Part shown: positions 18,573-55,559 of the stretch, one piece after another
Position numbering within the stretch: position 1 is the first letter of the stretch
Layout of the letters: the number at the start of each line of letters is the position of its first letter
Virus record (IMG/VR): IMGVR_UViG_3300035670_000008
Span: 152,564 to 216,563 of that record
DNA: 64,000 bases
Direction: 5' to 3' (one strand)
The notes under the pieces: generated by a model
Told to the model about the DNA's origin: nothing
The model's database searches: none
What the model saw: only the letters and a program-made list of their open reading frames with translations
Translations under genes and position numbers: made by a program

Positions 18573-21500
18573 ATGACTGTATCAGAAGACTACGAAGCGT
18601 TAAGAATACCAGTATTAGAAGGTATTAACGATGACCCCCAAGAGCCTAACTATTTAGACAACGGGCGGGGGTGTAATGGTTCTTACTATGTGCAACGCTA
18701 CAACGCACTGATTGATATTCTTAAGACGATTCCTGAAGGCCCTCCAGGTATCCAAGGGGAGCAGGGTATCCAAGGGGAGCAGGGTATCCAAGGTATTCAA
18801 GGTGAAGTTGGGCCAGAAGGCCCGCAAGGGGAGCAGGGTATAGCCGGTATTACTTGGCGAACCGGAGATGGTGCCCCGGATGACTCCTTGGGAGTAGACA
18901 ACGACTTGTATTTAGACTTGTTAACTGGGGATGTTTACAAGCGAATTAGCGGGGTTTACTACATCGTTCTTAATCTTATCGGGCCGGCTGGCCCAGAAGG
19001 GCCCCAAGGCGACCCTGGGTTAGACGGCTTGGATGGGATTGATGGCGCCACCATTCGCGTGGGTACCACCACTCCCGATAATGCTTTAGGGGAGAACGGG
19101 GATTACTATATTGTTTCTACGTCAGGTGACTTACATTTTAAGGACGGGGGTGCTTACTCAGTTGTAGCTAATCTGAGGGGGCCTCAAGGCGTTCAAGGTA
19201 TCCAAGGGGAGCAGGGTGTCCAAGGCGAGCCTGGAACTTCTATTACGGTCGTCGGAACGCTTACGGACGTAGGCGACCTTCCAGTAAGCTCTACGATCGG
19301 CAGCACCTACTTAGTTGGTGGAGAAGGCGGCGACCTTTATGTCTGGAGTGAAAACAGCACTTGGGTAAACCTAGGCCCGTTCCAAGGACCGCAAGGTATA
19401 CAAGGTGAGCAGGGTATACAAGGTATACAAGGTGAGCAGGGTATACAAGGTGAGCAGGGTATACAAGGTGAGCAAGGTCCTTCTGGAAACGTTTGGCGAA
19501 GCGGGCCTACCAACCCCTCTAATGACACTGGAGTAGATAACGACTACTACGTTAATACCACCAGCGGGGACGTCTTTAAGCGTATTGCTGGCACCTACGT
19601 TCTACAAGGCAACATTAAAGGGCCTATTGGCGACCCTGGCCCCCAAGGTGACCCTGGCGACCAAGGACCCCAAGGCCCCATCGGGGTAGCAGGAACTGTT
19701 TGGCGGAGTGCGGCTGGCGCTCCTAGTAATACCTTAGGAGTTGATGGCGACTACTATTTGAATACTTCTACCGGAGAAGTTTTAAGACGAACATCCGGTG
19801 TTTATGTATCACAAGGTAACATTAAAGGCCCTGTCGGCGACCAGGGTGTTCAAGGGCCTGAAGGTGTCGCTGGCCCTCAAGGCAACACTGGTATTCAAGG
19901 GCCAACCGGGCCTGCCGGGGATAAAGCCGGGGTCAAATATTACTACTCGTCTACCACAACAGATGCAGACCCCGGAAACGGAACGTTTCGCTTTAGCTCT
20001 ACTACCTTAGGAGCAATTACCTACCTTTATATTGACAACGCAGACTTTAATAATACTAACCAGACGCCTTGGTACAACGCCTGGGACGACTCTACCTCTA
20101 CTATCAAAGGCCAGCTTTATATTACAGGTAACACTGGCGGTAGCGCGGCAATGGCAGTGTTTAATATCACTGGGGATGTTATTATCTCCTCTGGTTACTA
20201 CAAAGTTCCAGTTTTAAACGTCACCGGTACTCTACCCGCTAATGGGGAGGTCTGCACGATTACTTTTGTACCTGCAGGCTACAAAGGCGACCAAGGTATT
20301 CAAGGTATTCAAGGTATTCAGGGAGAGACAGGCACTCAAGGGCTCCAAGGTAATCCGGGGGATAACGGAGCTACCGGCCCAGCTGGCCCAACAGGAGATA
20401 AAGGGGGTATTAAATATGTCTACTCCACGACGACCACAGACGCTGACCCTGGCAGTGGAATATTCCGGCTGAACAATTCGACGGTGAGTAGCGTCACCTT
20501 TATTTATATTGATAACGTTGACTCAGGTGGGGTCTCCCGAACAAACTGGTATGACACCTGGGACGACTCAACTTCCACAACCAAAGGGCAGCTCTACATT
20601 GCGGCTAACTCATCTAGTAACGCAACTCAATTGGTCTATAACGTTACTGCGATTACTGTAGCTAGTGGTTACTACAAGATAGCCGTCAGCTACGTTAGTG
20701 GGGTTAACACTTTATCGAATAGCGACGCTTGTACTTTAACCTTTGTGCCTACTGGAGCAAAAGGAGACCCGGGCCCCCAAGGGACTCAAGGGATTGACGG
20801 CCCTCCTGGTGACGGCGGTTACCGAGTTGGTCTACGGTATAACTTTTCTACTACGACTAACGCGACCGGAATCGCAGCGGGAACGATTCGGTACAACAGC
20901 TCAACAGTAAGCTCTGTAACAGTACTGTTCATTGCTAATACCGACGTTATGGGGCTTACCCAGAATACTTGGTTAGCGGGGTTAGACGACTCTACAAACA
21001 CTGGGAACCGGGGTCTCATCACCATCATGGGAGCCGACCCGACTAGCGCTACCGCGACGGTTTTCAAGGTAACAGGTTCAGCTACTGTTTTCTCTACCTA
21101 CACTTCTGTCGTAGTTACTTACGTTTCTGGAACTCGACCGGCGGACTCGCATGCTTTAGCCGTTCAGTTCAGCCCCTCTGGGGATCTTGGTCCGGTGGGC
21201 CCAGCTGGTGACGACGGAGCTACTGGCCCTGAGGGCCCTGCCGGCCCGGCAGGAACTACTGGCGCCACCGGGGCTGACGGCGGCTGGCAGAGTGCTCAAA
21301 CGATAACTACCTTCACAGCTAGCGGTAACTTAACATCTTCCCACGTTGGGCATTTAGTAAGAAGTAACACGGCTTCAAACATTACATTAACCATTACTCA
21401 ATTCACCCCAACTACAGGGGTTCATATTGACTTAATGCGTTATGGCACCGGCGGGCTGACGATTGCAGCTGCGTCCGGGGTAACAATTCGGAGTGTAGCT

Positions 21501-43800: not shown

Positions 43801-46641
43801 TCAATGGGTAAACTTCCCATTGCTTTGTTGGTTCCATTGGTGAATCAACGGCTTAAGTCGGGTGGTCAAGAACTTGATCGATTGATTAAGATCGACACTA
43901 AGTTGGTGTATGAACATGATGGAGTTCGTTCGGACAACGAGCTAGCCAAACTGACCGTCAAGAGAGGCTATACTTCTATCCGTCGGTTGACCCAGACGAT
44001 GTTAAAAGATTCCAGCAACACCGCCGCTAACATTTTAATTAAGGAAGTGTTGGGTGGGGATAAAGCGGCGACGCAGCTAGCTAAGCAGTACTACAAAGAT
44101 AACCAAATACAGATTGGTTACTACGGTGGTGACACTCGTAAGCGGATGGGCGGTACGTCAGCGGCTAAAGCCACCACCAAGTCTTTGTTCCAAGCTTGGA
44201 CAGAAATTCGACGGGGTAAAGGTGCTTACTTTGATGTAGCTAACCAAGCGCTGTCTGACCCTGGTCGTTTTAAACTACTAGGCGATACTTCCACAGCGTC
44301 TAAGATTGGAGTTACTTCCTCGGTATTAGGTAACGCCGGGACTTACTCCGGTGGTGAAATTTTAGTCTTTGACTTCGGCAGTAATAAAGACCACCGTGAC
44401 CCTAATAATCAGCGTCGTTTAGCTCAGGCAGCAGCTGAGGTCAACGCTTTGTTGGGTAAACGAACGACGGTGCAAGTAGCCAATCCATCTGCCCAGTATC
44501 AACAACAGCAGGCTCAACGGAATGTTAGCTACATTCCAGGGGTTGGCGCGGGTCGGTCGAGAATTGTAACCAGCCCCGCAAGTGGTGTAGTTACTAATAG
44601 AAATGACCCGGACAGCCGCGAGTTCGTAACGGGGAGTGATATTCAAATAGGCGGTATCCGTAACGGCGTGCCAATTTGGAATCCCATCCAAGGATTGACC
44701 CAGGTTAAGCCTAATAGCTTCCAAGGTCGAGGCAGAGGTAGAAGCGGAAAAGGTTGGGGTAACTTGACTCGCTACCGGATTGACTTAGGTAACAACCGAG
44801 TCGTAGAGATGTTGCTCGGTCACGGTGATCGCCCCTTTGAGGATTATATGGGTCAAGGCGGTATTGTACCATTCGCCTTACTTGGTTACCAAGGGGATAC
44901 AGGGCACGCAACAGGACCCCACGCTACTACTTCTTATAAACCGGTTAAGGGAACTAACGCGACTGCGGCTGACGCAAGATTAGTTGAACGCATGGTTCAG
45001 AATGCGTGGACCAGTAGAGGGTCTTGGGTTCGTGTCAACGGCGAGTGGCGTTTGGTTAAGTTGAACCAGGCCCAGCAGATGGGGTTACTTAATGGTACTC
45101 AACCTTCAGTTCAACCAAGTCAAACGGTTAAACCCCAACCAGTTAGTCAACCTGCTCGTAGCCAACAACAACTCAAGCAATCGTACCAACCTGCTGGTGA
45201 CTTCAAGCGAGTCAAAGCTAGTTACTACGGCGGTACCCAATTCCATGGTAAGCGAACGGCTTCAGGGGAAATCTACAACCAAAACGCGTTGACGGTAGCG
45301 GTTCCCCGGGATAAGCGGAATAGACCCATCATACCGTTTGGAACCGTCTTAGAAGTTATTAACCCAGCTAATGGCAAACGAGTCTTAGTTAAGGTTACTG
45401 ATACTGGTTCGTTTGGCAGTATGGGAAGAGGGTTAGACTTAAGCGTAGCCGCGGCTACAGCACTAGGTACGATTAAAGCTGGGGTGGCTAATGTTCAGTA
45501 TCGGATTGTCAAGCCTGTGGCTAACGCTAAACCACAAGAGCCAAAACTAGAGCTGCCTACTACTAAACCAAGTGATTGGGCTCCTCTTGTACCAAAGGCT
45601 GCGCCGCCGCCTGCTCCCAAACCTAAACCCAAGTTCAATATCTTTGACCCTAGAACCTGGCTAAGAAGCGAAGGGGTAAGACCTCAACAGACTTCTAACC
45701 CCGTAGCTACGATTAAATCTCCTGTCATAGAGGAACAGCAAAAAGGGGGTGATAACATGGTTCCTAGACAACGAATGGAGCCGGTGCTGGTCGCTGGGGA
45801 TTTATCTAAGCTTTCTGGTATTTTGCCTCCGGCAGATAAACTGCCTACGGCTAGTAACGTCTGGGGGATGCCTGGTCATCGGCCTGCGCCGACGGGTAAC
45901 TATCATGACTACGGCAAGCGCCCGCCGCAAAGAGAGGGCCCCATTTGGGGTCAGGCTGGTAGCAGACCGGAGCAGACCGGTAGCTACCAAGATTGGGAGC
46001 GGATACCCCAGCGTGACCGGACTACGCCGCCAGTACCTACGGTGCCGGGGCATCGTCCAGAGATATGGGATATTCTTCCCCCATTGGGGAATATTCCTGG
46101 AACGGTGGATATTCGTAACCCTAAAGCTAAGCCGACGATTCCGCCCAGTGAATGGGGAGTCGTTAAACCTAAGGCAAAGCCGAAAGTAAAAGCGACCCCC
46201 ACGCCTAGCCCGGCTCGTATTGAAGTGCCTATCGGAATGCCCAAAGCGGTGCTTGGACTAGCCGGTGTGCTAGCTAACGCAGTCGGGAAGAACTTTAACG
46301 CCGAGTTGGTGACGGAAGCCCAGGAGCTTTTGAATGATGCGGCGCAGGCAGCTGTGAGTTATGTAGAGCAAATTAAGGAGGCTAAGGCGGCGGCGATTCT
46401 TTCTTTAGAGCACCCACAGACGTTAGCTGGAGTTCGTCCGAGTAATCAACGTGGGCAGGAGGTTCGCACTAAGAAACAAGAGATAGTTGCTAGCTACGAA
46501 GACGGGAAGATTTATATTGGTCAGCAGATTCCTACTGAAGCAGTGCAGGCTCAGTTAGCCAACCGGGATATTAAGGTTCCGGTTCGTCCCGAGCACGAGC
46601 GAGCTGCCGCTCCACGGATGATGAATACGAAAGCAGACTAG
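25810..46641 (+). CDS. Giant (6943 aa) tape-measure-like/ejection protein with six C-terminal cell-wall-enzyme domains
   Basis: Uninterrupted ORF; long Ala/Gly-rich helical region with hydrophobic segments; C-terminal lysozyme-like, M23, VanY/M15B, beta-lactamase-like, second M23 and RlpA-DPBB motifs. Confidence 0.8.
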   Translation: MAIDYIDAVGGRLSVKLESSHLNESAGNMSIGGQVERTKEDPYGVVSYMHDTNRLARFVDGLRDIEVIQFAAPFNNIQRSVSPSPNPLSNMLEGAYNSAKWMQALFPSEVSMLMKTKQLKSLETDLTNFDSTVQNPIKLYEAREALLNNQIQAKYHKNKDGSFPEVTGAQLDRLQHSKLLEGLYSKEKQAQLQAEFKEKGFNVQAPTGKVQTTTAMFTDTSFLGISITGSGGALGSYEDYTLGFENPNIIRDLAYFRENKSTIDYYEREPVPGVTITGNLSIYKKRVEALREANEIQRILGKGKDGLFVYVASPSMDWNEQPREHNYRDTIQRKNVGAYIKELQKTGTQGILSLGIDKKRINIPAGEKTKLLQNAYIGDSRSGRRDHGNMQYINLRGTPKDRISKEAQEELARKGLLDKAVKGISTLSIGQYRIVGDESINQETTIDLNKVSPAYREAAEGIAQGSIGGKNFYQLRKDVAKEGIAGALLQEFYTPTFSDRQKRGWEQEGLLPNMPLSMPASFFRYFEPGTKTRIYTDRFKALTGYRPEGAQGYVLRTLDEKLSDPGLGNQINYMFRQRDLYEVGKGAVGTLAAGVGRFIDTATGFYTMQTIKARESGQLSGSLRKLYESRQRDPYEQTEKRGFFENLTTKAVAITGSTATAMASYFGVTHAYTMAKAAVEQVGVDYVLDSIASGKVGGASKLFLEQLLDESHSNLITGANIIYNAESGALRTIENTGKALDEYFDLSTRSSLKALQLDDELVDEVVKESDFIGGIRGKGIAAPTEQQAVLNLIGELDTSAAARDNTVAGLVTKKLEARLAEFAKRPGTATGAKPPAGEIRGWVTEIYKELGIHRDAGTIDLGRGVDHPTIAARVQQPAGFVNIASVRRMDTGNLHNMFIPLLDEVVFDKNNQQYRTAKENLLRLAKASPILSYKQTANNLSAASDLKIYNYGYERIRQLAEVFDELAEQLPANPLMWIKPIRQVFMANPLTGGQTRHSIEGGAETTLRYTFKDLIGPGFTGLINLQGQITRELVNINKVGLGKHLEGGFDLIKQSKELVQSQSQLVAIIQQSNSAQQAVEMLEGFNIGGNLTELGARKEFIRKQSRYDVLLRDRRRDYEELLKQEGGNPAFSGLRKGLLGIGTVLLVDRLFDTFVMRPQGVDLFDSILSDVIGSRSPAVEGREGDAAFQSLYDTEYSNALPNIVKYPSAAAGFFIGGHMFPSYEVAESSIYTAMRSKYGELGEAALSGTKFTLQAEGDRAIALGINKQIIKTKFGTAGALLGASAALIGSQLLANYVADVAKPAVRGFDNLASLATGVFTGQWGRWREPESGLDVDPVKGSAASVLAKLVHYSVRGQAKGYRKGGLVTAEQKTDTYLLGLTAQSMMQSDSKPPQLFYSFATQIASPFFQFASVGKVDPAKNTINLNAGLQLFPLLGAGLMLPSPLTPKVTYTSALPTRMVANYLKKYHEGVRYRYEPNTLGEIQEREAFHRMEEINKLSSMMLGGGVNLSLDTKPLVYLAMLGGLRDLSESSLAAFEQMQVNNRDLSPDKATKLYKELSNYETLFHAGRTGFNVLDTMSRAAYSLPMVMPNYLVKSATTLLGGAGRTQHILGPMARRASPYLLAFGILGASFRFNDKAMESELVTYADLQKLFKTGQYEGLNQKLIESQGINLTQTVIGSALLGAAISSSGAFESVRNFGAAYDRVQKITEQGGRAGYIDRQKHKLYSMWMEHLAEKGTVGLPLESGVDLVIESINTPSKASEAYEQISRRLVEPAEATLQTRLRDRQLIEAAREIDIPLVRTMPTRLGMLARRVAPLVVGAMVVSQMLATTDGFKQSPWMSLIRNLTDTGAGDLSAEQRAMLTKLGIKEPKYRPKDLGQSFRNIADYLVGAAMTPFGGNTFGLYQDNPNPFSPILGPLGVSLGSQDDVRPYLQSQSVAADISGSLYLLPAMSAGISEAMNLGPLLKYAGQLETHPKGSQIARALIRGAGLRTRAAKFKGGPSQREMRAASSPELQMALVRRYDRLRQLSWQTAGEHQWDVLAEFHRAGRILGNNQRGTIPGAEMNATRPATTMIYDTLGKLHLIPVLNDGTFITPRKNTETELLKFFRNLMSSGAGYGQGAAADFSADVTDTLIRRSQDRGGVPVLSFFSGLFQYAFNSFYDKNTEEIAADSNNVIGAGLMAGAAIALGASFVGTTFATGIQLVGALAALSDQGNISDVRSSIRDLRQGVKKRLRRSTFYIDQTNDRLVRPDGHNRIRALKDHNLTDEAVEQINQALTGQGRYGGYSPGNALETIIDADLRTTASKLVNTYHTGGGQTISTTVVEEVDALIKSLDTQLTVVVGGQQIHVGDLLTPTVAAEGATEAVVAHSVVKDKARLSTEIYEVLTSGKFKDTQQLEIERILLDHIDRGLAVTTADGRFEAAQATPNAYQPEAAVRAEQQAAAKKAAEQGVQTVEAYDPSVGYLRSKIQAKGYSGLMAEGAAGAMRAAGELINLKAYYEILSYTAAMGSSDVFDRRRSTQAAAQNTIQAFGMIIPMQYALKAAQASPGVAITAALTAAVIGGAALGNKQVRDTLGNIFKPVFSFGDKYVYKPAVQGLAGIYDAVTTAAPFIPQVLRPIAAVFDPIFSNMRSAAGNDPALSMLANFFVPEGVEQFYQRNAEIKGRTTPWGEAQEFYSNKELGQYYLSKMASRRRRGRSINAGIDSDLLHPFMQGKQVDIQYMNIFADRYLGGDGRIMEQFQTDRQMSNLLLMAIQRRQGMIDQYAEGSYMRKPYTKENVHHYFSTALALSKFSYAQTGSFIEAPINQAARGIGTTLGALQYVSELIPSEVGTKIKQGTVGAGIGFMVGAQLSHLGKDEGERRQYAAIGGSVGATVGGAGSVILAPSAQHLARRAFVALKKDKTVRAIAGGVATGAKYLTKQAGNALGMAGRWLNKAAPYLTFGALTTAAVYTNYDFLANLVDGDDRHKKGPLYNPLLKMGVSAGVGATTTLLGFTAVLGKNSNILASRLGKATGGVFRAGGKGANVLLLTGLTNFLLTNNVTGALPKTALRSAYTALNIGREEDFENYYSSGAAAASLVTGVVTPPVTNWIHGNYKRQLTGLLTPELNTIGPASAIPVDESQRAMALVTKLQGDLDFVEGRTSMKPVNTTAKMARLLGIAEDAVVQTNLEEEYLNVLSNKQLALRHARSLVDANLQHGFIHEGLRSIRAVARVSGHIGTLGLGYFLKGLSSSNSVPLSVLAMIMGGLGGFGYQHVNAKTANDRSWVNYMGAGLAGGYAAGTAAGLVTSFGSGNLPSVPLSKYPQRLMNLFARIVKAIDKGDVDDAISTKALPKWLDDIQGFSQKLLQDPRSAGLSESVNLKSVGTKVDWFKLSNKVLPVAAFSIDVLNLYTSVNQINNLQYGRSQAQFQQAYSSYQSTISTIAFSALMGIAARNTSFSRILGGTLQAGQLGYKRGLDESDNAYADAMVDNVAYQTSKRKQTMLALGAGGLSALSVSISALRANPSFAQRVLPKSLVALGSRPLAQSAAQQIDDFGMPVVQTAFTAYGLHRVAKPYEQRYEHSSNVSYQMAQRRGELMSLVLFATGSALLARKPSTKLGAAVTKYIPGLGAIGAGALKDLYTKDSFYQYEAMFLKSGITNDYAKNIIATKAAESTDDNLGITLGLTTLASIGLLVATKGKYKGPILAAPAVVASGLGYYNYSSTIHGEINERKQYEETGGLKPEEVAEYQEWRSSGELYPSRWKNTRQGVNYQKYKEAERRRITNFNLNYNAPVRRGYGFTPAPVDAKSIPDFVLRAAAMESHAKAIENHKANPVVLGASAAGLGLATWIVGTSRIPTLNVIPAAGKHYLSSWKTAVPFGTHVGTNLIEPVITGVAIAAEQRKINDLSKVPISVGIAGEMQAVRQSVDITTAQDKMTFLALMSQLPLSGETTLGSIVRGGLVHGIGHAIFESNIGMVREREFKQRVKVLAEARAKGVKVNSALLSKAVKAQATTDEGHAIAATLGIGQTATKLFMGGNVNAASSINASVEGAVSFLGIKAVINRAIGKRRFDNVVLNRSTRDDGRVLDSEPVANVVKQSAGPTGSKSSFEDDYLTNPYMLEAGATIGAYALITLGSSYLAARATKKAASIALNKAKQLLEERKLAAEPSVTTTAAEPAVAEPSPLASPEPAVSADTSAKGVSTVMDLYEETAPSPLASAEPPVGKPSYSADTSGQGVSAVLDLYESITPQTPAPETVAKPIVTAEPPSTSSQDVINKVTNPEPPTPTPTVTAPPSPEPTGPSKLESRKPRFGQIDPNLKGNISTGKKQALTAGKFLLGTSTDDHLSSSLVSLNRAINQVQNAGFASLGPAGASRYGQLMGERQAILLEQRRRQQQASQQVIETVAAEPEITPKPLEQPAPPQPTKPIPTTPKEPTVEPSLLDTTKAADYLPVPIYESFTDTSFLSRTSGKQTTLGRQKFLMAGGYMSTNSYSNVPELERAGGKDSADINKGDLSIRVSIKAQTVKDGKRVDIDNPYINIQHIWNIANDEYGRGGVITRDYILEINSFPGATVEEKAKSAYAYFEQQYARRMQELRSSNPAAIDKYMADAGHGDYLSWDYNNRQGDEGFLFKHEINPTGAVGKVTPPVENPTLPKPPQPQPTKTSDRTALLNIYETSTSGVEGSGSRDYDYTLPRGYGITYGNKPSGLDKDKFVERLDVDFKEREGGYRKIDLLGTKVEARTAALALKPMEVFNTSGIYTQTKNGKQLKVAYVSTMLGMASDVSEKDARKMVYHRDYFAEIKPEQDEQVVLRQLQAQYVEAVEWAKINAPDQIKDGHLVPRPEGKFVPIDLSNVGGLHTTIPQQDGGFIKPVPLPTSAERQVLSQQRADRVRRGQAKGIDYQMMLMDMVYGKAKESVTGVISKAKEISQSFVSGVGRAVRGTANQAWDGWSIFDRLEGLDARFGNQGMGGGAGFWTRFGQSAKYELSGRGIVEGGFGIGRNAQTGKVGIQGKGGAMALAGMGLQLADDILTLDWSRKNFAKSLGTVAKNQATSLAAGVAFGLVTAGLGALALSSVPALAALGIVGSAVLMGYGIYSLADQGFKVGGKAWEKFVLKRKRTAEEQKVYEQQSQVLSMGFGVGTFVYAGYNQIKSLQGARRAASVVNQAPVVPTVPVRQAVDVIDDVAPRTPVNPTRSGSVLKTAGKAVKVASTMYSVYQIGTGLHQAFTGKTEQAKDQGRRQAVREIGGLIGMRAGAKVGGYVGRAGGTAVTANPTGAIVGDVAGQAVGGYIGYQGGSNIAEQMYDNAMEMMYGKMNQRQRQEAVDKEVKRRSAGSQYNLEAIQGKEQKVAKQIERPRAWWRSDEEDTPWWKKLLQTIGKGVEALGNFLTRTKNAALDAADALSNWATGGVPLSSDALISGNLRAANSRGTSIIQAAQILGINPLDLATIVEFESDGNPHIRGGAGGNYIGLIQFGPNERKKYGYHSKMTFEEQMLGPVVNYFKDRFKSAGMSTEGASLEDLYTTVLAGNPKANRGSRDAFGTSPRSGVRKMTAPGADRDIALQKYFIVDGTLNAPTGFQVPSGARWASSMGVRDAKTLAQLPQRTGGNAYGMRIHPTQGRRKLHAGEDYAFPIGTPLSTATPAVVVFAGMLGNAGNTVVLRHSNGTYTRSLHMDKISVKAGDVLMPNQMYGTVGTTGDSTGPHLHFEEGSWDSKTNRFKAKPPTDLGRKSIQVGGKTVKVQATPPTSPQDYFNKVAPIQSGQTQSQQIITRTERKSTKVGGVTHYAYTNTTQKLVTIADSQVIGKQKQQLNETTAKQVNKMLAELKAATGVDLWILSGYRSVEYQQELWNKKKREGKSDAVIAKSLAIPGFSEHHTGDAFDISLQGQANLTAEQWASNPKLREARAWLDKNQSKYGFETSFLPGNKENVVSEPWHLRYVGPGSEYARQIKTNVTTSQQVINQVQGGTTTQQVALNQQQLTQGIEAIRKKYGLQSIYAQTKGGVTVGTVDKNKPAVVSSASMGKLPIALLVPLVNQRLKSGGQELDRLIKIDTKLVYEHDGVRSDNELAKLTVKRGYTSIRRLTQTMLKDSSNTAANILIKEVLGGDKAATQLAKQYYKDNQIQIGYYGGDTRKRMGGTSAAKATTKSLFQAWTEIRRGKGAYFDVANQALSDPGRFKLLGDTSTASKIGVTSSVLGNAGTYSGGEILVFDFGSNKDHRDPNNQRRLAQAAAEVNALLGKRTTVQVANPSAQYQQQQAQRNVSYIPGVGAGRSRIVTSPASGVVTNRNDPDSREFVTGSDIQIGGIRNGVPIWNPIQGLTQVKPNSFQGRGRGRSGKGWGNLTRYRIDLGNNRVVEMLLGHGDRPFEDYMGQGGIVPFALLGYQGDTGHATGPHATTSYKPVKGTNATAADARLVERMVQNAWTSRGSWVRVNGEWRLVKLNQAQQMGLLNGTQPSVQPSQTVKPQPVSQPARSQQQLKQSYQPAGDFKRVKASYYGGTQFHGKRTASGEIYNQNALTVAVPRDKRNRPIIPFGTVLEVINPANGKRVLVKVTDTGSFGSMGRGLDLSVAAATALGTIKAGVANVQYRIVKPVANAKPQEPKLELPTTKPSDWAPLVPKAAPPPAPKPKPKFNIFDPRTWLRSEGVRPQQTSNPVATIKSPVIEEQQKGGDNMVPRQRMEPVLVAGDLSKLSGILPPADKLPTASNVWGMPGHRPAPTGNYHDYGKRPPQREGPIWGQAGSRPEQTGSYQDWERIPQRDRTTPPVPTVPGHRPEIWDILPPLGNIPGTVDIRNPKAKPTIPPSEWGVVKPKAKPKVKATPTPSPARIEVPIGMPKAVLGLAGVLANAVGKNFNAELVTEAQELLNDAAQAAVSYVEQIKEAKAAAILSLEHPQTLAGVRPSNQRGQEVRTKKQEIVASYEDGKIYIGQQIPTEAVQAQLANRDIKVPVRPEHERAAAPRMMNTKAD
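42030..42430 (+). other. Lysozyme-like/lytic transglycosylase domain in the giant protein
   Basis: AAQILGINPLDLATIVEFES...YIGLIQFG...LEDLYTTVLAGNP (catalytic ES and GLxQ motifs). Confidence 0.7.
42560..42890 (+). other. Peptidase M23 domain in the giant protein
   Basis: GMRIHP...HAGED (HxxxD)...GNTVVLRH...LHM...STGPHLHFE (HxH). Confidence 0.9.
43150..43570 (+). other. VanY-like (M15B) D-Ala-D-Ala carboxypeptidase domain in the giant protein
   Basis: SGYRS..YQ, PGFSEHHTGDAFD (SxHxxGxAxD), EPWHLRYVG (ExxH). Confidence 0.9.
43700..44460 (+). other. Class A beta-lactamase-like/serine D,D-peptidase domain in the giant protein
   Basis: ASMGK (SxxK), DSSNTAAN (SxN), SKIG (KTG-like), in the correct order and spacing. 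Confidence 0.75.
44560..44960 (+). other. Second, divergent M23-like domain in the giant protein
   Basis: GSDI...GWGN...LLGH...LLGYQGDTGHATGPHAT; the first Zn-binding His and the last His appear substituted. Confidence 0.6.
45200..45510 (+). other. RlpA-like double-psi beta-barrel lytic transglycosylase domain in the giant protein
   Basis: ASYYG..FHGKRTASGE.YNQNALT.A...PFGT.LEV.N..NGK.VLVKVTDTG...RGLDLS.AAA..LG. Confidence 0.9.
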
Positions 46642-47105
46642 ACTTTAGTCTTTGTCTTCTTAGTAGTAGCGCCGGCCATGAACTTAGCGGCTCGGTCAGA
46701 TATACCCAACTGCTCGGGAGTCAGATTACCTCTAGTAAGTGCGTCGGCAATGTTCTGCTCGCGGGGAATCCATTGCATACTCCAACTCTCGAAGCAACTA
46801 AGTAGGTCTTTTGCGTAGGTGAGGGCAATATACAGATGAGCTTGTTTGGTATTCCAGTCACCGTTGGTGCATTTAACCACTAAGTCGCTATCTCCGTAGA
46901 TTTCGATGTCTCGAACGCCATGCTCGATAGCTTTGGTTAGCCCTAGGATTAGCCCACCGAACTCAGCGCTGTTGTTGGTGCCTGTGCCCATGAACTGGGA
47001 GTATTCGTGTTTTGTATCGTCTGGGGTAATTAAGACAGCGCCCGCGGTGCAATGGCCCGGGTTACTCGGTGCGGCGCTGCCATCAAAGAATAGAATTGCT
47101 TTCAT
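46638..47105 (-). CDS. rnhA: Ribonuclease HI
   Basis: FFDGS...NPG, TNNSAEF, YGDSDLV, WIPREQN.AD, supplying the DEDD catalytic residues. Confidence 0.92.
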   Translation of the reverse strand: MKAILFFDGSAAPSNPGHCTAGAVLITPDDTKHEYSQFMGTGTNNSAEFGGLILGLTKAIEHGVRDIEIYGDSDLVVKCTNGDWNTKQAHLYIALTYAKDLLSCFESWSMQWIPREQNIADALTRGNLTPEQLGISDRAAKFMAGATTKKTKTKV

Positions 47106-48753: not shown

Positions 48754-49461
48754 TTAAAGGAACCGACCTTCAGTCGCCAGGGTTAATTGAGCGCCGTTAT
48801 AGTTGAGCCTAAATGGCAACGGCTTGTTTTCTAGCAGCGCGTAGACAACTTCATTAGTCATTAATGCACTGGCAAAGTTGGCGTTGATTAATTGAGGGCT
48901 GGACACGGCTTCGTAGCCGCAGCTACCACGGGGCTGGTCGCTAGGGCGCTCGTAGTTGGTAGCTACGTCAAAGGGGTGAACCGGACGAAGTTTACCCTCC
49001 ACGCGGGAGTACCATAAGCAGGTAGCAGTATGGAAGTCGTTACCTGGTAGGACGCAGGCGAAGTCCAATACTGGGTCGAGGTCGTCTAGGTCTTTGATAA
49101 CTTCGTTACGGGCGGACTCAGAGTCAACGGCTAAGACTACCAGCACCGCGCCGGGTTCGTCGCAGTGAGTAGTGTACTCTTCCAGCTGGGTACGGAACTT
49201 GTGCCGCCTTACGAAGTCTGGTACCGCGCTAATATTACAGACGGACTCCAGTCTTTTAGCAGCAGCGGCAGCTTTGTTTATACCTACGAAGGCAGGGTCG
49301 AATAATTGCCTTACACTATTAGACGATTCATACTCGTCGCCGTCATACACACAGACGTTCTTGGTGCCTTCCTTGTGATAGGCTAACAGCCGGACTAAAG
49401 GCTCTAATAGAATCGAACCGGTTCCACCGGCGCCGATGACATGACAGCTAGAAAATTTCAT
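48754..49461 (-). CDS. E1-like ThiF-family ubiquitin-activating enzyme (PRTRC-ThiF type)
   Basis: VIGAGGTG nucleotide-binding loop, YDGD.YESSN..RQ, G.NKA, AVD...AR, candidate catalytic GSC and QLINAN. Confidence 0.88.
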   Translation of the reverse strand: MKFSSCHVIGAGGTGSILLEPLVRLLAYHKEGTKNVCVYDGDEYESSNSVRQLFDPAFVGINKAAAAAKRLESVCNISAVPDFVRRHKFRTQLEEYTTHCDEPGAVLVVLAVDSESARNEVIKDLDDLDPVLDFACVLPGNDFHTATCLWYSRVEGKLRPVHPFDVATNYERPSDQPRGSCGYEAVSSPQLINANFASALMTNEVVYALLENKPLPFRLNYNGAQLTLATEGRFL

Positions 49462-50392
49462 TCTTGGCTCCTAAGATTTCAAATTTGGATTTAGTGGATA
49501 AGGTTTTTGAGTAAAGCACCAAGTCGCGGCAGGTCGTTAAGTACCCGCTGGGAGTTTTCTTTATCCAGCCGACCACGTAGGTTTTATCTGGTTTAGGCCG
49601 GTAGTGGTAACTTAAAGGGACTGTCTCGAACAGTTTCCCACGGTCAGCGACCACCATCGCTTGTGGTCTTTTGGTAGCGACTTTCAGAGTTAGGTCTGGA
49701 GCCCGGAAGGAAGTGGCTTCTTCTAGACTAAGGTGCGGCGGGGTGGGACTGGTTCGCTGGGCATACTCTTCATGGTCGTAGCTACTAAGTAGAAGTTCCG
49801 TGCTGCGGTCGTTTGTCCCCTGGGCCAGGTCTCGGTTAAAGTTGCTGGTGAAGAACGTATTGAACGCTTCCAGGTGGTCACGCGGCCGTTCTGCCCTACC
49901 CCAACAAATTTCACCATCGCGGTAAACGTTAGCTAACCGGTAGGGCACGTAGGTGCCGTCTTTGGTAACCGCAAATAGTTTCCAGCTTCCATGGTATATA
50001 GACATCAAAGACTTCGGAACGTGGATAGTCTTTGTGCCGTATAAGTGCTCTTCAACTGTGCATCCCAACCTGCATTTGTTGTCAAATACGCGGAGTGTGC
50101 CACCATCGCAAAGCTCACACTCGTCCATGAAGGCTCTCCTATGTGTCTGCAGTACGGAGAATTTGTAATCGGCCCGCTCGAAGCCAGTTGTCTTGATAAA
50201 CAACTTAGTAATGTCATCTATAGGTTTGTAATAGAAACAACCTTTGCAGGTCTCTTCAAACGAGTCTTGGCTGTTATAGCGGATGTCAATGCTGAAGGGG
50301 TCAAACAAGCAGGAGATTTTTATCCTGTTGCTTTTGTTGATACTAAGAATGGCCCCCGCCGCGATGGACGGGAACCGAAGCACTTTGAACAT
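49448..50392 (-). CDS. Prokaryotic E2 family D-like conjugating enzyme (copy 2)
   Basis: PYRLANVYRDGEICWG...FNTFFTSNFNRDL; Cys near 49905. Confidence 0.75.
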   Translation of the reverse strand: MFKVLRFPSIAAGAILSINKSNRIKISCLFDPFSIDIRYNSQDSFEETCKGCFYYKPIDDITKLFIKTTGFERADYKFSVLQTHRRAFMDECELCDGGTLRVFDNKCRLGCTVEEHLYGTKTIHVPKSLMSIYHGSWKLFAVTKDGTYVPYRLANVYRDGEICWGRAERPRDHLEAFNTFFTSNFNRDLAQGTNDRSTELLLSSYDHEEYAQRTSPTPPHLSLEEATSFRAPDLTLKVATKRPQAMVVADRGKLFETVPLSYHYRPKPDKTYVVGWIKKTPSGYLTTCRDLVLYSKTLSTKSKFEILGAKNEIF

Positions 50393-54671: not shown

Positions 54672-54721
54672 AGTTTAAACAGCTAAGTGTGTCACCTTAG
54701 TACTATGGCACATTTCTTAAG

Positions 54722-54751
54722 AAAAAGTGAAGGGGGCGCATAGGCACCCCC
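54722..54751 (-). terminator. Terminator ending the tmRNA/tRNA transcript
   Basis: Minus strand GGGGGTGC-CTAT-GCGCCCCC followed by TTCACTTTTT. Confidence 0.7.
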
Positions 54752-54910
54752 GGTGACCTAGTTGGGTAACAAGGTTAGGTCAGACCCCGTCATTCATACC
54801 GCAACAGCGGTACGTTTGAAAGCAACCACTTGGTTGGCATTTGTTGTTTGCTCATCCGAGCAGGCTTCATCGTAGTGCCATCCTTTACCAATCGAAACCG
54901 TTGCATCCCC
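54732..54910 (-). ncRNA. ssrA: tmRNA coding piece (5' half of a permuted two-piece tmRNA)
   Basis: Begins GGGGAUG-CAACGGUUUCGA (tmRNA 5' end and D-loop analogue); tag ORF 54838-54794 reads ANQVVAFKRTAVAV*; pairs with the piece at 55064 onward; 3' end approximate. Confidence 0.85.
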
Positions 54911-54911
54911 G

Positions 54912-54987
54912 TGGTACAGGGTACAGGAGTTGAACCTGTCTAAGCGGAATTATGAGTTCCGTGCCTAAACCGCTCGGCCAACCCTGC
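54912..54987 (-). tRNA. tRNA with CAU anticodon (probably Ile2/lysidine type, otherwise elongator Met)
   Basis: GCAGGGU/ACCCUGU acceptor stem, anticodon arm CGGAA-CUCAUAA-UUCCG, T-loop GUUCAAC, encoded CCA; lacks the initiator GGG/CCC anticodon stem. Confidence 0.9.
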
Positions 54988-54991
54988 AAGG

Positions 54992-55062
54992 CACCTCCTG
55001 AAGGAATCGAACCCTCGTATTCGGTTTTGGAGACCGACGTTCTACCACTGAACTAAGGAGAT
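54992..55062 (-). tRNA. tRNA-Trp (CCA anticodon)
   Basis: AUCUCCU/AGGAGGU acceptor stem, G73 discriminator, anticodon arm UCGGU-CUCCAAA-ACCGA, T-loop GUUCGAU; followed by CCU rather than CCA. Confidence 0.92.
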
Positions 55063-55063
55063 T

Positions 55064-55130
55064 TGGTGGAGATGGGGAGAGTCGAACTCCCGTCTTGGCA
55101 ACCAGCCGCTACGACTATCCCAGTTTAAAG
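55064..55130 (-). ncRNA. ssrA: tmRNA acceptor piece (3' half of a permuted two-piece tmRNA)
   Basis: Ends GAC-GGGAG-UUCGACU-CUCCC-CAUCUCC-A-CCA; CAUCUCC pairs with GGGGAUG giving G3.U70 and A73; 5' end uncertain. Confidence 0.85.
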
Positions 55131-55160
55131 ACGTATGGAAGGTCTATTGTTATTTTAGCT

Positions 55161-55559
55161 TTAATTAGATTTAGCTTCTAGTATTTTAGTGGCTTTTGCA
55201 GCTAGCTTCTCAAAGACCTCCGCGGGGAGACTTTCTTGGCAGACAATCATAAAGACTTTACGGAACTCTTTAGTGCTGCTGTAAATAGCTGCGTTGGACC
55301 TTTTTCTTTCTCTTAGCCGTCTTTCCTTTTCGAGTTGCACCCGCTTAAGGCTGGAAATCCGGTAGCGTTTCGCTGACTTTGCTCGGGCTTCCCATTCTTT
55401 GTCGTTCTGCCCTCTTACTTCAGCGTATTCCAGGTGTGTATTGATGGTAGCTATCTCTTCGTGTAGCTGCAGTTCTAAGTCCTCCAGCTCCTCTTCTGAT
55501 AGCTCTTGAGTGTTTAATGTGTTAGGGGGCTGTTTTGACAGTCCACTTAAGTTATCCAT
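55161..55559 (-). CDS. Hypothetical coiled-coil protein
   Basis: 132-aa helical ORF overlapping the upstream stop. Confidence 0.65.
   Translation of the reverse strand: MDNLSGLSKQPPNTLNTQELSEEELEDLELQLHEEIATINTHLEYAEVRGQNDKEWEARAKSAKRYRISSLKRVQLEKERRLRERKRSNAAIYSSTKEFRKVFMIVCQESLPAEVFEKLAAKATKILEAKSN

What the first reader, a model, noticed from the sequence alone, without database searches (positions are those of the whole stretch)
54722..55130. Circularly permuted two-piece tmRNA whose intervening segment is two tRNA genes
Seen on the minus strand in transcription order: tmRNA 3' acceptor piece ending ...CAUCUCCACCA (55064), 1 nt, tRNA-Trp, 4 nt, tRNA-CAU with CCA, 1 nt, tmRNA 5' piece starting GGGGAUG (54910), tag ORF, terminator. 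The pieces pair: a 7-bp acceptor stem with G3.U70 and A73 (Ala identity), UUGGUAA/UUGCCAA, and CUACGAU/GUCGUAG. Known: permuted two-piece tmRNAs occur in alphaproteobacteria, some betaproteobacteria and the Prochlorococcus/Synechococcus lineage, normally with a short disposable spacer; some phages carry tmRNA. Inference: tRNA maturation (RNase P and 3' trimming) excises the spacer, so one precursor yields two tRNAs plus both tmRNA halves. I know of no described example of this nesting, and standard annotators would probably report only the tRNAs.
Basis: partly seen in the sequence, partly recalled or inferred. Interest (0 to 1): 0.88.

Follow-up and report, generated by a model that had tools for sequence, protein, structure and literature searches.

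The report
Phage two-piece tmRNA enclosing two tRNAs
A large cyanobacterial virus carries a split ("two-piece") ribosome-rescue RNA gene whose disposable middle segment has been replaced by two complete tRNA genes, a rare layout that ordinary tRNA-cutting enzymes should resolve into four RNAs from one transcript.

Summary
On the minus strand lie a tmRNA acceptor piece ending in CCA at 55064, 1 nt, tRNA-Trp, 4 nt, tRNA(CAU) with CCA, 1 nt, and a tmRNA coding piece starting at 54910, followed by a 14-codon tag ORF, a pseudoknot and a terminator hairpin. ARAGORN calls a permuted tmRNA that encloses both tRNAs. Rfam RF04321 scores 86.8 bits (threshold 47, E 3e-15). The in-silico rejoined gene is called a standard tmRNA with the same tag.

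The window is the last 64 kb of a 216-kb uncultured myovirus contig, distantly like Microcystis and Microcoleus phages. The tmRNA is a very divergent relative of the picocyanobacterial permuted lineage.

The layout is rare but not unique. A related contig has the same order, although HNH endonuclease genes interrupt it. Two marine cyanophage contigs nest a tRNA-Asn in the same position. A 2025 tmRNA database paper notes one MAG with a tRNA-Ala in the intervening segment.

Processing by RNase P and 3' trimming, alanylation and tagging are inferred, not shown.

Verdict: a real feature and a new variant of a known kind, of moderate interest.

The parts
55122..55127 (-). Candidate -10-like hexamer TAAACT. 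It is placed so that transcription would start about at the first paired base of the acceptor piece. This is inferred only.
   Evidence: Read from the sequence. The simple sigma-70 scan found no full -35/-10 promoter on this strand between 55160 and 56300. The leader 55150-55116 is 100% identical in the relative L043.
55064..55116 (-). tmRNA acceptor (3' tRNA-like) piece. It holds the P2b strand GUCGUAG (55115-55109), the P2a strand UUGCCAA (55101-55095), the T arm (55091-55075, loop UUCGACU), the acceptor 3' strand (55074-55068), A73 (55067) and encoded CCA (55066-55064). The 5' end is uncertain; ARAGORN starts the gene at 55156.
   Evidence: ARAGORN; Rfam RF04321 alignment; direct reading.
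55063..55063 (-). 1-nt spacer (A) between the acceptor piece's CCA and tRNA-Trp +1.
54992..55062 (-). tRNA-Trp (anticodon CCA), with A1-U72 and G73. CCA is not fully encoded: CC is followed by UU.
   Evidence: ARAGORN; Rfam tRNA at 65.8 bits.
54988..54991 (-). 4-nt spacer CCUU between tRNA-Trp's discriminator base and tRNA(CAU) +1.
54912..54987 (-). tRNA with anticodon CAU and encoded CCA (54914-54912). It is elongator-type: it lacks the three G-C pairs of an initiator anticodon stem. Met versus Ile2 (lysidine) is not resolved. The D arm looks class-II-like but the variable loop is short.
   Evidence: ARAGORN; Rfam tRNA at 54.4 bits; direct reading of the stems.
54911..54911 (-). 1-nt spacer (C) between tRNA(CAU)'s CCA and tmRNA G1.
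54725..54910 (-). tmRNA coding (5' tRNA-like plus mRNA-like) piece. It holds the acceptor 5' strand GGGGAUG (54910-54904), the GGUUUCGA motif (54899-54892), the P2a strand (54891-54885), the P2b strand (54875-54869), a hairpin (54861-54850), the tag ORF, a pseudoknot (about 54789-54754) and a terminal hairpin.
   Evidence: Rfam RF04321; beta and cyano model alignments; blastn at 74-81% identity over 54-97 nt to Prochlorococcus two-piece tmRNAs.
54794..54838 (-). Tag reading frame. The resume codon is GCC, and the frame encodes ANQVVAFKRTAVAV followed by UGA.
   Evidence: ARAGORN; Rfam alignment of the resume region.
54722..54751 (-). Terminator-like hairpin (8 pairs, 7 of them G-C) followed by a T run. 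This is the 3' end of the precursor and coding piece.
   Evidence: The hairpin is kept in L043 despite sequence changes.

Best explanation
This is a genuine phage-borne, circularly permuted (two-piece) tmRNA gene of the cyanobacterial type. Two functional-looking tRNA genes fill its normally disposable intervening segment.

One transcript ends at the hairpin at 54751-54732. It starts either at a -10-like element just upstream of 55116 or further upstream, in which case it also carries the preceding ORFs. It folds as a fully nested structure: the tmRNA acceptor stem and the two P2 helices close a loop that holds two cloverleaves.

Host RNase P would cut at the 5' ends of tRNA-Trp, tRNA(CAU) and the tmRNA coding piece. 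That leaves 3' trailers of only 1 nt (A), 4 nt (CCUU) and 1 nt (C). These would be trimmed by 3' exonucleases or RNase Z, with CCA completed on tRNA-Trp by the CCA-adding enzyme.

The products would be tRNA-Trp, tRNA(CAU), the acceptor piece and the coding piece. The two tmRNA pieces stay base-paired through 21 intermolecular pairs. The complex would be charged with alanine (G3.U70, A73), bind host SmpB, and add the tag A-ANQVVAFKRTAVAV to nascent chains on stalled ribosomes during infection.

Shown: the gene anatomy, its model scores, its recurrence in a related phage, and the same kind of nesting in another cyanophage lineage. Inferred: transcription as one unit, the cleavage sites, charging, SmpB binding and tagging.
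For: - ARAGORN calls a permuted tmRNA with both tRNAs inside.
- Rfam RF04321 scores 86.8 bits against 47, E 3e-15, across the full model, with the 153-nt insert falling exactly at the loop position.
- The IVS-deleted construct and the re-permuted construct are both still called tmRNA with the same tag.
- The identity and signature elements are all present: G3.U70, A73, encoded CCA, the T loop UUCGACU, GGUUUCGA, resume codon GCC and an in-frame stop.
- The canonical nested fold is feasible, at -137.7 kcal/mol against an unconstrained minimum of -145.4.
- The coding piece is 74-81% identical over 54-97 nt to Prochlorococcus two-piece tmRNAs. It shares only the universal 19-22 nt with one-piece cyanobacterial tmRNAs.
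- The related contig L043 has the same gene order and the same junctions. Its tmRNA parts are 244/244 nt identical and tRNA-Trp is 72/73, while flanking DNA is 74-89% identical.
- Independent nesting exists elsewhere. L186 and L257 carry cyano_tmRNA (99.8 and 121 bits) with the layout CCA, then A, then tRNA-Asn, then 4 nt (UCAU, read in L257), then GGGG. They differ by a compensatory change at acceptor pair 5:68.
- That permuted tmRNA precursors are cut by tRNA processing enzymes is stated in PMC11915505.
Against: - There is no expression, end-mapping or charging data.
- No sigma-70-like promoter was found on the strand.
- Thermodynamic co-folding of the mature pieces recovers the acceptor stem and T arm but not the P2 helices. 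Its interaction energy is no better than shuffles, z = -0.4.
- The clade-specific Rfam models are below threshold: beta scores 63 against 84, and cyano scores lower.
- The tag ends in AVAV rather than the usual xAA.
- No SmpB gene was seen among the window ORFs tested, so function depends on the host's SmpB.
- In the only close relative (L043), HNH endonuclease genes interrupt the acceptor piece and tRNA(CAU), so the gene may be dispensable.
- The perfect conservation could partly reflect recent homing-associated gene conversion rather than selection.
- Only two sequences of this lineage exist, so there is no covariation within it.
Confidence: 0.75

Rival explanations
1. This is a decaying or dispensable tmRNA relic. 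The gene was acquired from a host, tRNA genes later landed in its spacer, and it is no longer used. Only the two tRNAs matter to the phage.
For: In the one close relative (L043), HNH_3 endonuclease genes on the opposite strand split both the acceptor piece's T arm and tRNA(CAU). There is no room for a ribozyme and no Rfam intron hit. The tag has an atypical C-terminus, AVAV. The clade-specific models are below threshold.
Against: Every identity and signature element of a tmRNA is intact in the window. No substitution occurs in 244 nt of tmRNA sequence between two phages whose flanks differ by 11-26%. In contrast, the disrupted tRNA(CAU) halves have diverged to 92-94% identity. The tag frame is open with a proper stop.
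Confidence: 0.13
2. The RNA is made but acts as a modulator rather than a normal rescuer. It might titrate host SmpB or compete with host tmRNA, as proposed for the tRNA-like-domain-only molecule of mycobacteriophage DS6A. Alternatively, it might add a tag with an altered degron that changes the fate of rescued proteins.
For: Phage tRNA-like-domain-only tmRNA and its inhibitory effect are described in PMC4131195 and PMC11915505. The tag ends in VAV rather than the usual AA. The tmRNA is very divergent from any sampled cellular tmRNA, at about 56% identity.
Against: A complete, conserved tag ORF, the upstream resume-region motif and the pseudoknot are all kept. A pure decoy would not need them.
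Confidence: 0.1
3. This is a false positive: tRNA-like sequences within a tRNA cluster are being mistaken for tmRNA halves.
For: tmRNA finders are known to give false hits on tRNAs (PMC4131195, PMC11915505).
Against: The match covers the full 213-position model at 86.8 bits and includes the non-tRNA parts: the GGUUUCGA motif, both P2 helices, the resume region and the tag. There is homology to Prochlorococcus tmRNA in the mRNA-like part. The re-permuted join is called a standard tmRNA.
Confidence: 0.02

Closest known systems
Cyanobacterial two-piece (circularly permuted) tmRNA, Rfam RF01851, covered by the general model RF04321
   Same: The acceptor piece lies upstream of the coding piece on one strand. 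Shared features are the acceptor stem with G3.U70 and A73, the T arm, the GGUUUCGA motif, two P2 helices between the pieces, a hairpin before the resume codon, a tag of the AN..V.F.R type, a 3' pseudoknot and a terminal hairpin.
   Different: The intervening segment is 153 nt and consists of two tRNA genes, instead of the few to about 20 nt seen in the cellular genes sampled here. CCA is encoded. The sequence is only about 56% identical to the cellular genes. The clade model does not reach its threshold.
Permuted tmRNA with a tRNA-Ala gene in its intervening sequence, from a nominally archaeal MAG (GCA-2688965 sp002688965.2), noted in PMC11915505
   Same: A complete, high-scoring tRNA gene sits inside the intervening sequence of a permuted tmRNA.
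   Different: That case has one tRNA rather than two, sits in a MAG rather than a phage, and was mentioned in one sentence as unique without analysis. I could not fetch it for comparison.
Marine T4-like cyanophage permuted tmRNAs: S-SSM7 and Sf-FS3 (cultured), and L186, L257 and L015 (uncultured)
   Same: These are phage-borne cyano-type two-piece tmRNAs embedded in tRNA clusters. L186 and L257 nest a tRNA-Asn with the same kind of CCA-plus-A junction as the window.
   Different: They belong to a different phage group and carry a different tRNA (one tRNA-Asn). Their tmRNA sequence is closer to the cellular consensus, at 100-143 bits on RF01851. The cultured members have a short intervening segment of about 5 nt with no encoded CCA in S-SSM7, and none has a nested tRNA.
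Phage two-piece tmRNAs in general, such as the OM43 phage Melnitz and pelagiphages (PMC9004378)
   Same: They are permuted tmRNAs carried by aquatic phages. Proposed roles are keeping the hijacked translation machinery running or tagging host proteins.
   Different: Those are alphaproteobacterial-type. Their long intervening segments hold no tRNA: none of about 220 other viral loci examined did.
Spacer tRNAs in bacterial rRNA operons, and polycistronic tRNA arrays (established knowledge)
   Same: tRNAs embedded between two parts of a larger structured precursor act as built-in RNase P and 3'-processing sites, so one transcript yields several stable RNAs.
   Different: In those cases the flanking RNAs (16S, 23S) are separate molecules that do not have to re-associate. 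Here the two flanking pieces must pair to form a single functional RNA.

Membership tests
Circularly permuted (two-piece) tmRNA | The acceptor (3' tRNA-like) piece is encoded upstream of the coding (5' tRNA-like plus tag) piece on the same strand. | tested here: met
   The acceptor piece ends at 55064 and the coding piece starts at 54910, both on the minus strand.
Circularly permuted (two-piece) tmRNA | A 7-bp acceptor stem forms between the pieces, with G3.U70 and A73 (alanine identity) and a 3' CCA position. | tested here: met
   54910-54904 pairs with 55074-55068, including G3.U70. A73 is at 55067 and CCA is encoded at 55066-55064.
Circularly permuted (two-piece) tmRNA | A T arm with a T-loop consensus, and the 5' GGUUUCGA (D-loop analogue) motif. 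| tested here: met
   The T arm is GGGAG, loop UUCGACU, CUCCC at 55091-55075. GGUUUCGA is at 54899-54892.
Circularly permuted (two-piece) tmRNA | P2 helices join the two pieces beyond the tRNA-like domain. | tested here: met
   Two 7-bp helices can be written, and the model aligns them. They are not recovered by minimum-energy co-folding. There is no covariation within this lineage because only two near-identical sequences exist.
Circularly permuted (two-piece) tmRNA | A tag reading frame with an alanine resume codon and a stop, encoding a hydrophobic C-terminal degron. | tested here: met
   The resume codon is GCC, followed by 14 codons and UGA. The C-terminus is AVAV rather than the usual xAA, so degron strength is unknown.
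Circularly permuted (two-piece) tmRNA | The covariance-model score is above the curated threshold. | tested here: met
   RF04321 scores 86.8 bits against 47.
Circularly permuted (two-piece) tmRNA | The precursor is cleaved into two pieces, charged with alanine, bound by SmpB and active in trans-translation. | not testable with these tools
   This needs RNA end mapping, in vitro RNase P and AlaRS assays, and tagging assays.
Cyanobacterial permuted tmRNA clade (RF01851) | The clade-specific covariance model scores above its threshold of 70 bits. | tested here: not met
   In the window the best clan model is beta_tmRNA at 63 bits (threshold 84), and cyano scores lower. On L043's coding piece, cyano scores 42.7 bits. 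The long insert is penalised, and I could not score the spliced sequence with Infernal.
Cyanobacterial permuted tmRNA clade (RF01851) | Sequence kinship to picocyanobacterial two-piece tmRNAs rather than to the beta or alpha clades or to one-piece genes. | tested here: inconclusive
   Mean identity is 56% to 102 cyanobacterial genes against 50% to 12 betaproteobacterial genes. blastn finds 74-81% identity over 54-97 nt only to Prochlorococcus. In the tree the window sits on a very long branch with no supported placement.
Group I intron-interrupted tmRNA (intron form) | [quoted passage not shown] | tested here: not met
   The window has no insert in the T loop. The insert in L043's T arm is almost entirely an antisense HNH ORF, with no Rfam intron hit at E < 0.1.

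The most novel reading that the evidence does not exclude
In cyanophages the intervening segment of permuted tmRNA is a recurrent landing site for tRNA genes, and in relatives for homing-endonuclease cassettes. The nested tRNAs are not passive cargo. They are the processing signals that define both inner ends of the tmRNA, replacing spacer removal and coupling the output of tRNA-Trp, tRNA(CAU) and tmRNA from one precursor. A further corollary is that the two halves can be released before they pair, so the tmRNA must assemble in trans. The HNH-split relative might then still work as a three-part RNA or as one that retains the insert.
Probability: 0.25. Interest if true: 0.75.

Novelty: new variant of a known kind. 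Interest (0 to 1): 0.55.

Why it matters
Two-piece tmRNA is a textbook case of a circularly permuted RNA gene. Its intervening segment has been treated as throw-away spacer.

This locus shows, with two tRNAs in one lineage and one tRNA in a second, that the spacer can hold functional genes. It also shows that tRNA punctuation alone can supply every inner processing site. That makes a natural four-in-one stable-RNA operon.

The locus offers a simple experimental system for asking two questions. Do the tmRNA halves have to fold in cis before cleavage? And how does RNase P choose among three adjacent tRNA-like substrates?

It adds to the evidence that aquatic phages commonly carry tmRNA. It also exposes an annotation gap: the tmRNAs of the cultured cyanophages S-SSM7 and Sf-FS3 are unannotated and overlapped by "hypothetical protein" calls.

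The finding does not open a long-standing question, and one precedent is already in print.

Tried and rejected
**1. Independent permutation of a one-piece gene.** The idea was that a tandem duplication of tmRNA plus neighbouring tRNAs, followed by loss of the outer halves, would create a nested layout at birth. I rejected it provisionally. The coding piece shares the pre-resume hairpin region with Prochlorococcus two-piece tmRNAs but only the universal termini with one-piece cyanobacterial tmRNAs.

**2. Thermodynamic support for pairing between the pieces.** RNAcofold gave no signal above shuffles, and the minimum-energy fold of the precursor is not the canonical one. I treat this as uninformative, not as negative evidence.

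**3. Metagenome scan with the 5'-piece 19-mer.** It returned 113 loci and no relative. They are one-piece tmRNAs or chance matches, and L124 lies inside a CDS.

**4. First genome-contig scan.** It returned nothing.

**5. Second genome-contig scan.** I designed the pattern badly. It is therefore not a survey of nesting in cellular genomes, and I reused it only as a reference set.

**6. Neighbour-protein searches.** The 202-aa DUF1281_C protein found 20 distant viral loci, and none of the eight scanned has a tRNA or tmRNA.

**7. Apparent extra cases.** L015 and L009 looked like further examples but are not.

**8. Group I intron explanation for L043's inserts.** Rejected.

**9. Lineage tree.** The window sits on a branch too long for any supported placement.
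Full report
**1. What is there**

- The acceptor piece ends with its acceptor 3' strand (55074-55068), A73 (55067) and an encoded CCA (55066-55064).
- One base (A, 55063) follows.
- tRNA-Trp, anticodon CCA, occupies 55062-54992.
- Four bases (CCUU) follow.
- A tRNA with anticodon CAU occupies 54987-54915, with its own encoded CCA at 54914-54912.
- One base (C, 54911) follows.
- The tmRNA 5' end, GGGGAUG, starts at 54910.

The 7-bp acceptor stem contains G3.U70. Two further 7-bp helices join the pieces: 54891-54885 with 55101-55095, and 54875-54869 with 55115-55109.

Downstream lie several more elements:
- a small hairpin at 54861-54850;
- the resume codon GCC at 54838;
- a 14-codon tag, ANQVVAFKRTAVAV, with stop codon UGA at 54796-54794;
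- an H-type pseudoknot at about 54789-54754;
- a G+C-rich hairpin with a T run at 54751-54722, which the terminator scan also picks up.

**2. Is it more than chance?**

- ARAGORN reports a permuted tmRNA at 54703-55156 with this tag. It also reports the two tRNAs inside it, and these are the only tRNAs in the 64-kb window.
- Rfam 15's general permuted model RF04321 matches end to end at 86.8 bits (gathering score 47, E 3e-15). The 153-nt tRNA block is placed as an insertion at the loop between the two acceptor strands.
With the intervening segment deleted, or replaced by 10 nt, the gene is still called a permuted tmRNA.
- With the coding piece joined to the acceptor piece (54910-54732 plus 55130-55064), it is called a standard one-piece tmRNA. 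The tag is identical in every case.
- A structure constrained to the three cloverleaf-type domains plus the P2 helices is fully nested. It costs -137.7 kcal/mol against an unconstrained minimum of -145.4.
- Plain thermodynamics is otherwise uninformative. Co-folding the mature pieces finds the acceptor stem and T arm but prefers an alternative partner for the P2 strands. The interaction energy is no better than shuffles, z = -0.4.

**3. Context**

- The window is the last 64 kb of a 216,563-bp JGI contig (Ga0310129_0000034, which is IMGVR_UViG_3300035670_000008). Loci fetched from that contig are identical to the window.
- It encodes a tail sheath, a baseplate wedge, tail fibres and a 6,943-residue ORF.
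- The tail sheath finds only the Microcystis Ma-LMM01 group and a Microcoleus phage, at 27-29% identity. This is therefore an uncultured large myovirus, probably of a freshwater cyanobacterium.
- The same phage, with identical DNA, also turns up in a Logan assembly of SRR10854513.
- Upstream of the tmRNA lies a 132-aa ORF that ends at 55161. No full sigma-70-type promoter is found on the strand. A -10-like TAAACT at 55127-55122 would start transcription at about the first paired base of the acceptor piece, but that is only a reading of the sequence.
- None of the ten window ORFs of 140-220 residues that I tested is SmpB. The RNA would have to use the host's SmpB.

**4. Which tmRNA lineage?**

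The clade-specific Rfam models do not reach threshold. In the window, beta_tmRNA scores 63 bits against 84, and cyano scores lower. On the relative's coding piece alone, cyano_tmRNA scores 42.7 bits against 70.

The evidence still leans towards the cyanobacterial permuted lineage:
- The coding piece aligns at 74-81% over 54-97 nt with Prochlorococcus two-piece tmRNAs. The aligned region runs from the 5' end through the pre-resume hairpin to the resume codon.
- With one-piece cyanobacterial tmRNAs it shares only the universal 19-22 nt termini.
- Against a reference set of 120 cellular permuted genes, mean identity is 56% to cyanobacterial genes and 50% to betaproteobacterial genes.
- In a tree, however, the phage gene sits on a very long branch with no supported placement.

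I therefore call it a highly divergent relative of the cyanobacterial permuted lineage. I do not claim clade membership. I also reject, provisionally, the idea that it is a fresh permutation of a one-piece gene.

**5. Relatives and recurrence**

*A related contig with the same layout.* One other viral contig (IMGVR_UViG_3300047551_002099; loci L043 and L044) encodes an 85%-identical copy of the 521-aa neighbour protein. It has the same order and the same junctions: acceptor piece, A, tRNA-Trp, CCUU, tRNA(CAU), C, coding piece.

The tmRNA parts are 244/244 nt identical to the window. tRNA-Trp is 72/73, while flanking genes are 74-89% identical.

That allele is interrupted twice:
- About 530 nt sit between the AAGACGG segment and the T stem of the acceptor piece.
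- About 690 nt sit right after the anticodon of tRNA(CAU).

Each insert carries an HNH_3 endonuclease gene on the opposite strand. The second insert also carries an 89-nt tRNA-like gene with anticodon CAU and a long variable arm. There is no room for a ribozyme and no Rfam intron hit.

So the nested layout predates the split of these two phages. The relative is either a very recent knockout or works in some unknown split form. The perfect conservation argues for purifying selection, but gene conversion associated with the homing endonucleases cannot be excluded.

*How common is nesting in viral contigs?* I scanned IMG/VR for CCA-encoding permuted tmRNAs with intervening segments of 70-200 nt. 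I then ran ARAGORN on every intervening segment.

Of 225 loci, only three have genuinely nested tRNAs: the window's own contig, L186 and L257. The other loci that were scanned carry alphaproteobacterial-type tags and tRNA-free spacers.

*The second nested lineage.* L186 and L257 are marine cyanophage contigs with cyano_tmRNA scores of 99.8 and 121 bits. Their order is tRNA-Tyr, tRNA-Thr, acceptor piece ending in CCA, A, tRNA-Asn, 4 nt (UCAU, read in L257), coding piece. The two differ by a compensatory change at acceptor pair 5:68, G-C against A-U.

Their cultured relatives S-SSM7 and Sf-FS3 carry the same tmRNA with a short spacer of about 5 nt and no nested tRNA. In S-SSM7 no CCA is encoded. 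In GenBank these genes are unannotated and overlapped by hypothetical-protein calls.

Nesting has therefore arisen at least twice in cyanophages, with different tRNAs.

**6. Literature**

- Phage tmRNAs are known (PMC4131195). These include two-piece forms, which are enriched in aquatic phages (PMC9004378).
- The 2025 database paper notes, as a "unique feature" among 97,179 sequences, one permuted tmRNA in a nominally archaeal MAG with an intact tRNA-Ala in its intervening sequence.
- Full-text searches found no paper describing nested tRNAs in a phage tmRNA.
- The guess that annotators would miss the gene is wrong for ARAGORN and Rfam 15. It is right in practice for the GenBank records of related phages.

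**7. Mechanism**

*Shown:* the anatomy, the scores and the recurrence.

*Inferred from established tRNA and tmRNA biology:*
- RNase P cuts 5' of tRNA-Trp, of tRNA(CAU) and of tmRNA G1.
- The remaining 3' trailers of A, CCUU and C are trimmed, and CCA is completed on tRNA-Trp.
- The two tmRNA pieces stay paired, are alanylated through G3.U70 and A73, bind host SmpB and tag stalled chains.

One consequence is worth testing. The first RNase P site lies upstream of the coding piece, so the acceptor piece could be released before its partner is transcribed. The halves would then have to find each other in trans.

*Rivals:* a dispensable relic (about 0.13), a decoy or altered-degron modulator (about 0.10), and a false positive (about 0.02).

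**8. Verdict**

The core interpretation is supported as far as sequence analysis can go, and two side claims are corrected. This is a new variant of a known kind: a phage two-piece tmRNA with two nested tRNAs.

It has one brief published precedent for a single nested tRNA. Interest is moderate at 0.55: a neat and rare gene architecture with a clean experimental handle, but not a new kind of system.

Noticed in passing
L043 62-592 and 733-1426 (IMGVR_UViG_3300047551_002099): In the window's closest relative, two HNH_3 homing-endonuclease genes on the opposite strand interrupt the tmRNA acceptor piece at the base of its T stem and tRNA(CAU) right after the anticodon. The tmRNA parts nevertheless remain 244/244 nt identical to the window.
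   Followed up: partly
L043 1336-1424: An 89-nt tRNA-like gene with anticodon CAU and a long (class II) variable arm is carried in the second HNH insert. It may replace the disrupted tRNA(CAU). Its amino-acid identity is unknown.
   Followed up: no
L279 (S-SSM7, GU071098 about 20967-21318) and L278 (Sf-FS3, PV340856 about 20801-21128): Cultured marine cyanophages carry cyano-type permuted tmRNA genes (RF01851 at 109 and 143 bits). These are not annotated in GenBank and are overlapped by hypothetical-protein CDS calls.
   Followed up: partly
L186 6834-7095 and L257 2147-2577: Marine cyanophage contigs carry a tRNA-Asn nested in the intervening segment of a cyano-type permuted tmRNA. This is an independent second case of the same architecture. 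The two nested forms encode CCA, whereas the un-nested relative S-SSM7 does not.
   Followed up: yes
window 25810-46641 (+): A single ORF of 6,943 residues follows the tail and baseplate genes. It is presumably a giant virion or fibre protein.
   Followed up: no
window 48754-50392 (-): Adjacent genes hit the ThiF (E1-like) and Prok-E2_D (E2-like) families. This is a ubiquitin-like conjugation pair in a phage.
   Followed up: no
window 46638-47105 (-): A 155-aa RNase H-like protein (Pfam RVT_3 and RNase_H).
   Followed up: no
L401 (Microcystis phage MaAM05, MW495066 35694-39758): The tRNA-Trp that is 91% identical to the window's lies next to secE, nusG, rplK and rplA. That is a typically bacterial arrangement, found here inside a 274-kb record deposited as a phage.
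   Followed up: no
L280 1302-1512 (Synechococcus phage S-B05): A manA RNA motif (RF01745, 82.5 bits) sits between tRNA genes of the phage's tRNA cluster.
   Followed up: no
L124 about 380-1165: A tRNA-like gene appears to be split by an insert of about 700 nt that holds an ORF. It looks like an intron-containing tRNA, in a bacterial metagenome contig that matched the search pattern only by chance.
   Followed up: no
L404 position 1 (Logan SRR10854513), which corresponds to window about 54767: An independent assembly of the same phage breaks its contig inside the tmRNA 3' domain. This may reflect strain variation at this locus, such as alleles with HNH inserts.
   Followed up: no
window 54672-54719 (-): The 48-nt spacer downstream of the terminator hairpin is 47/48 identical in L043, although the next ORF is only 80% identical. 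This is unexplained.
   Followed up: no
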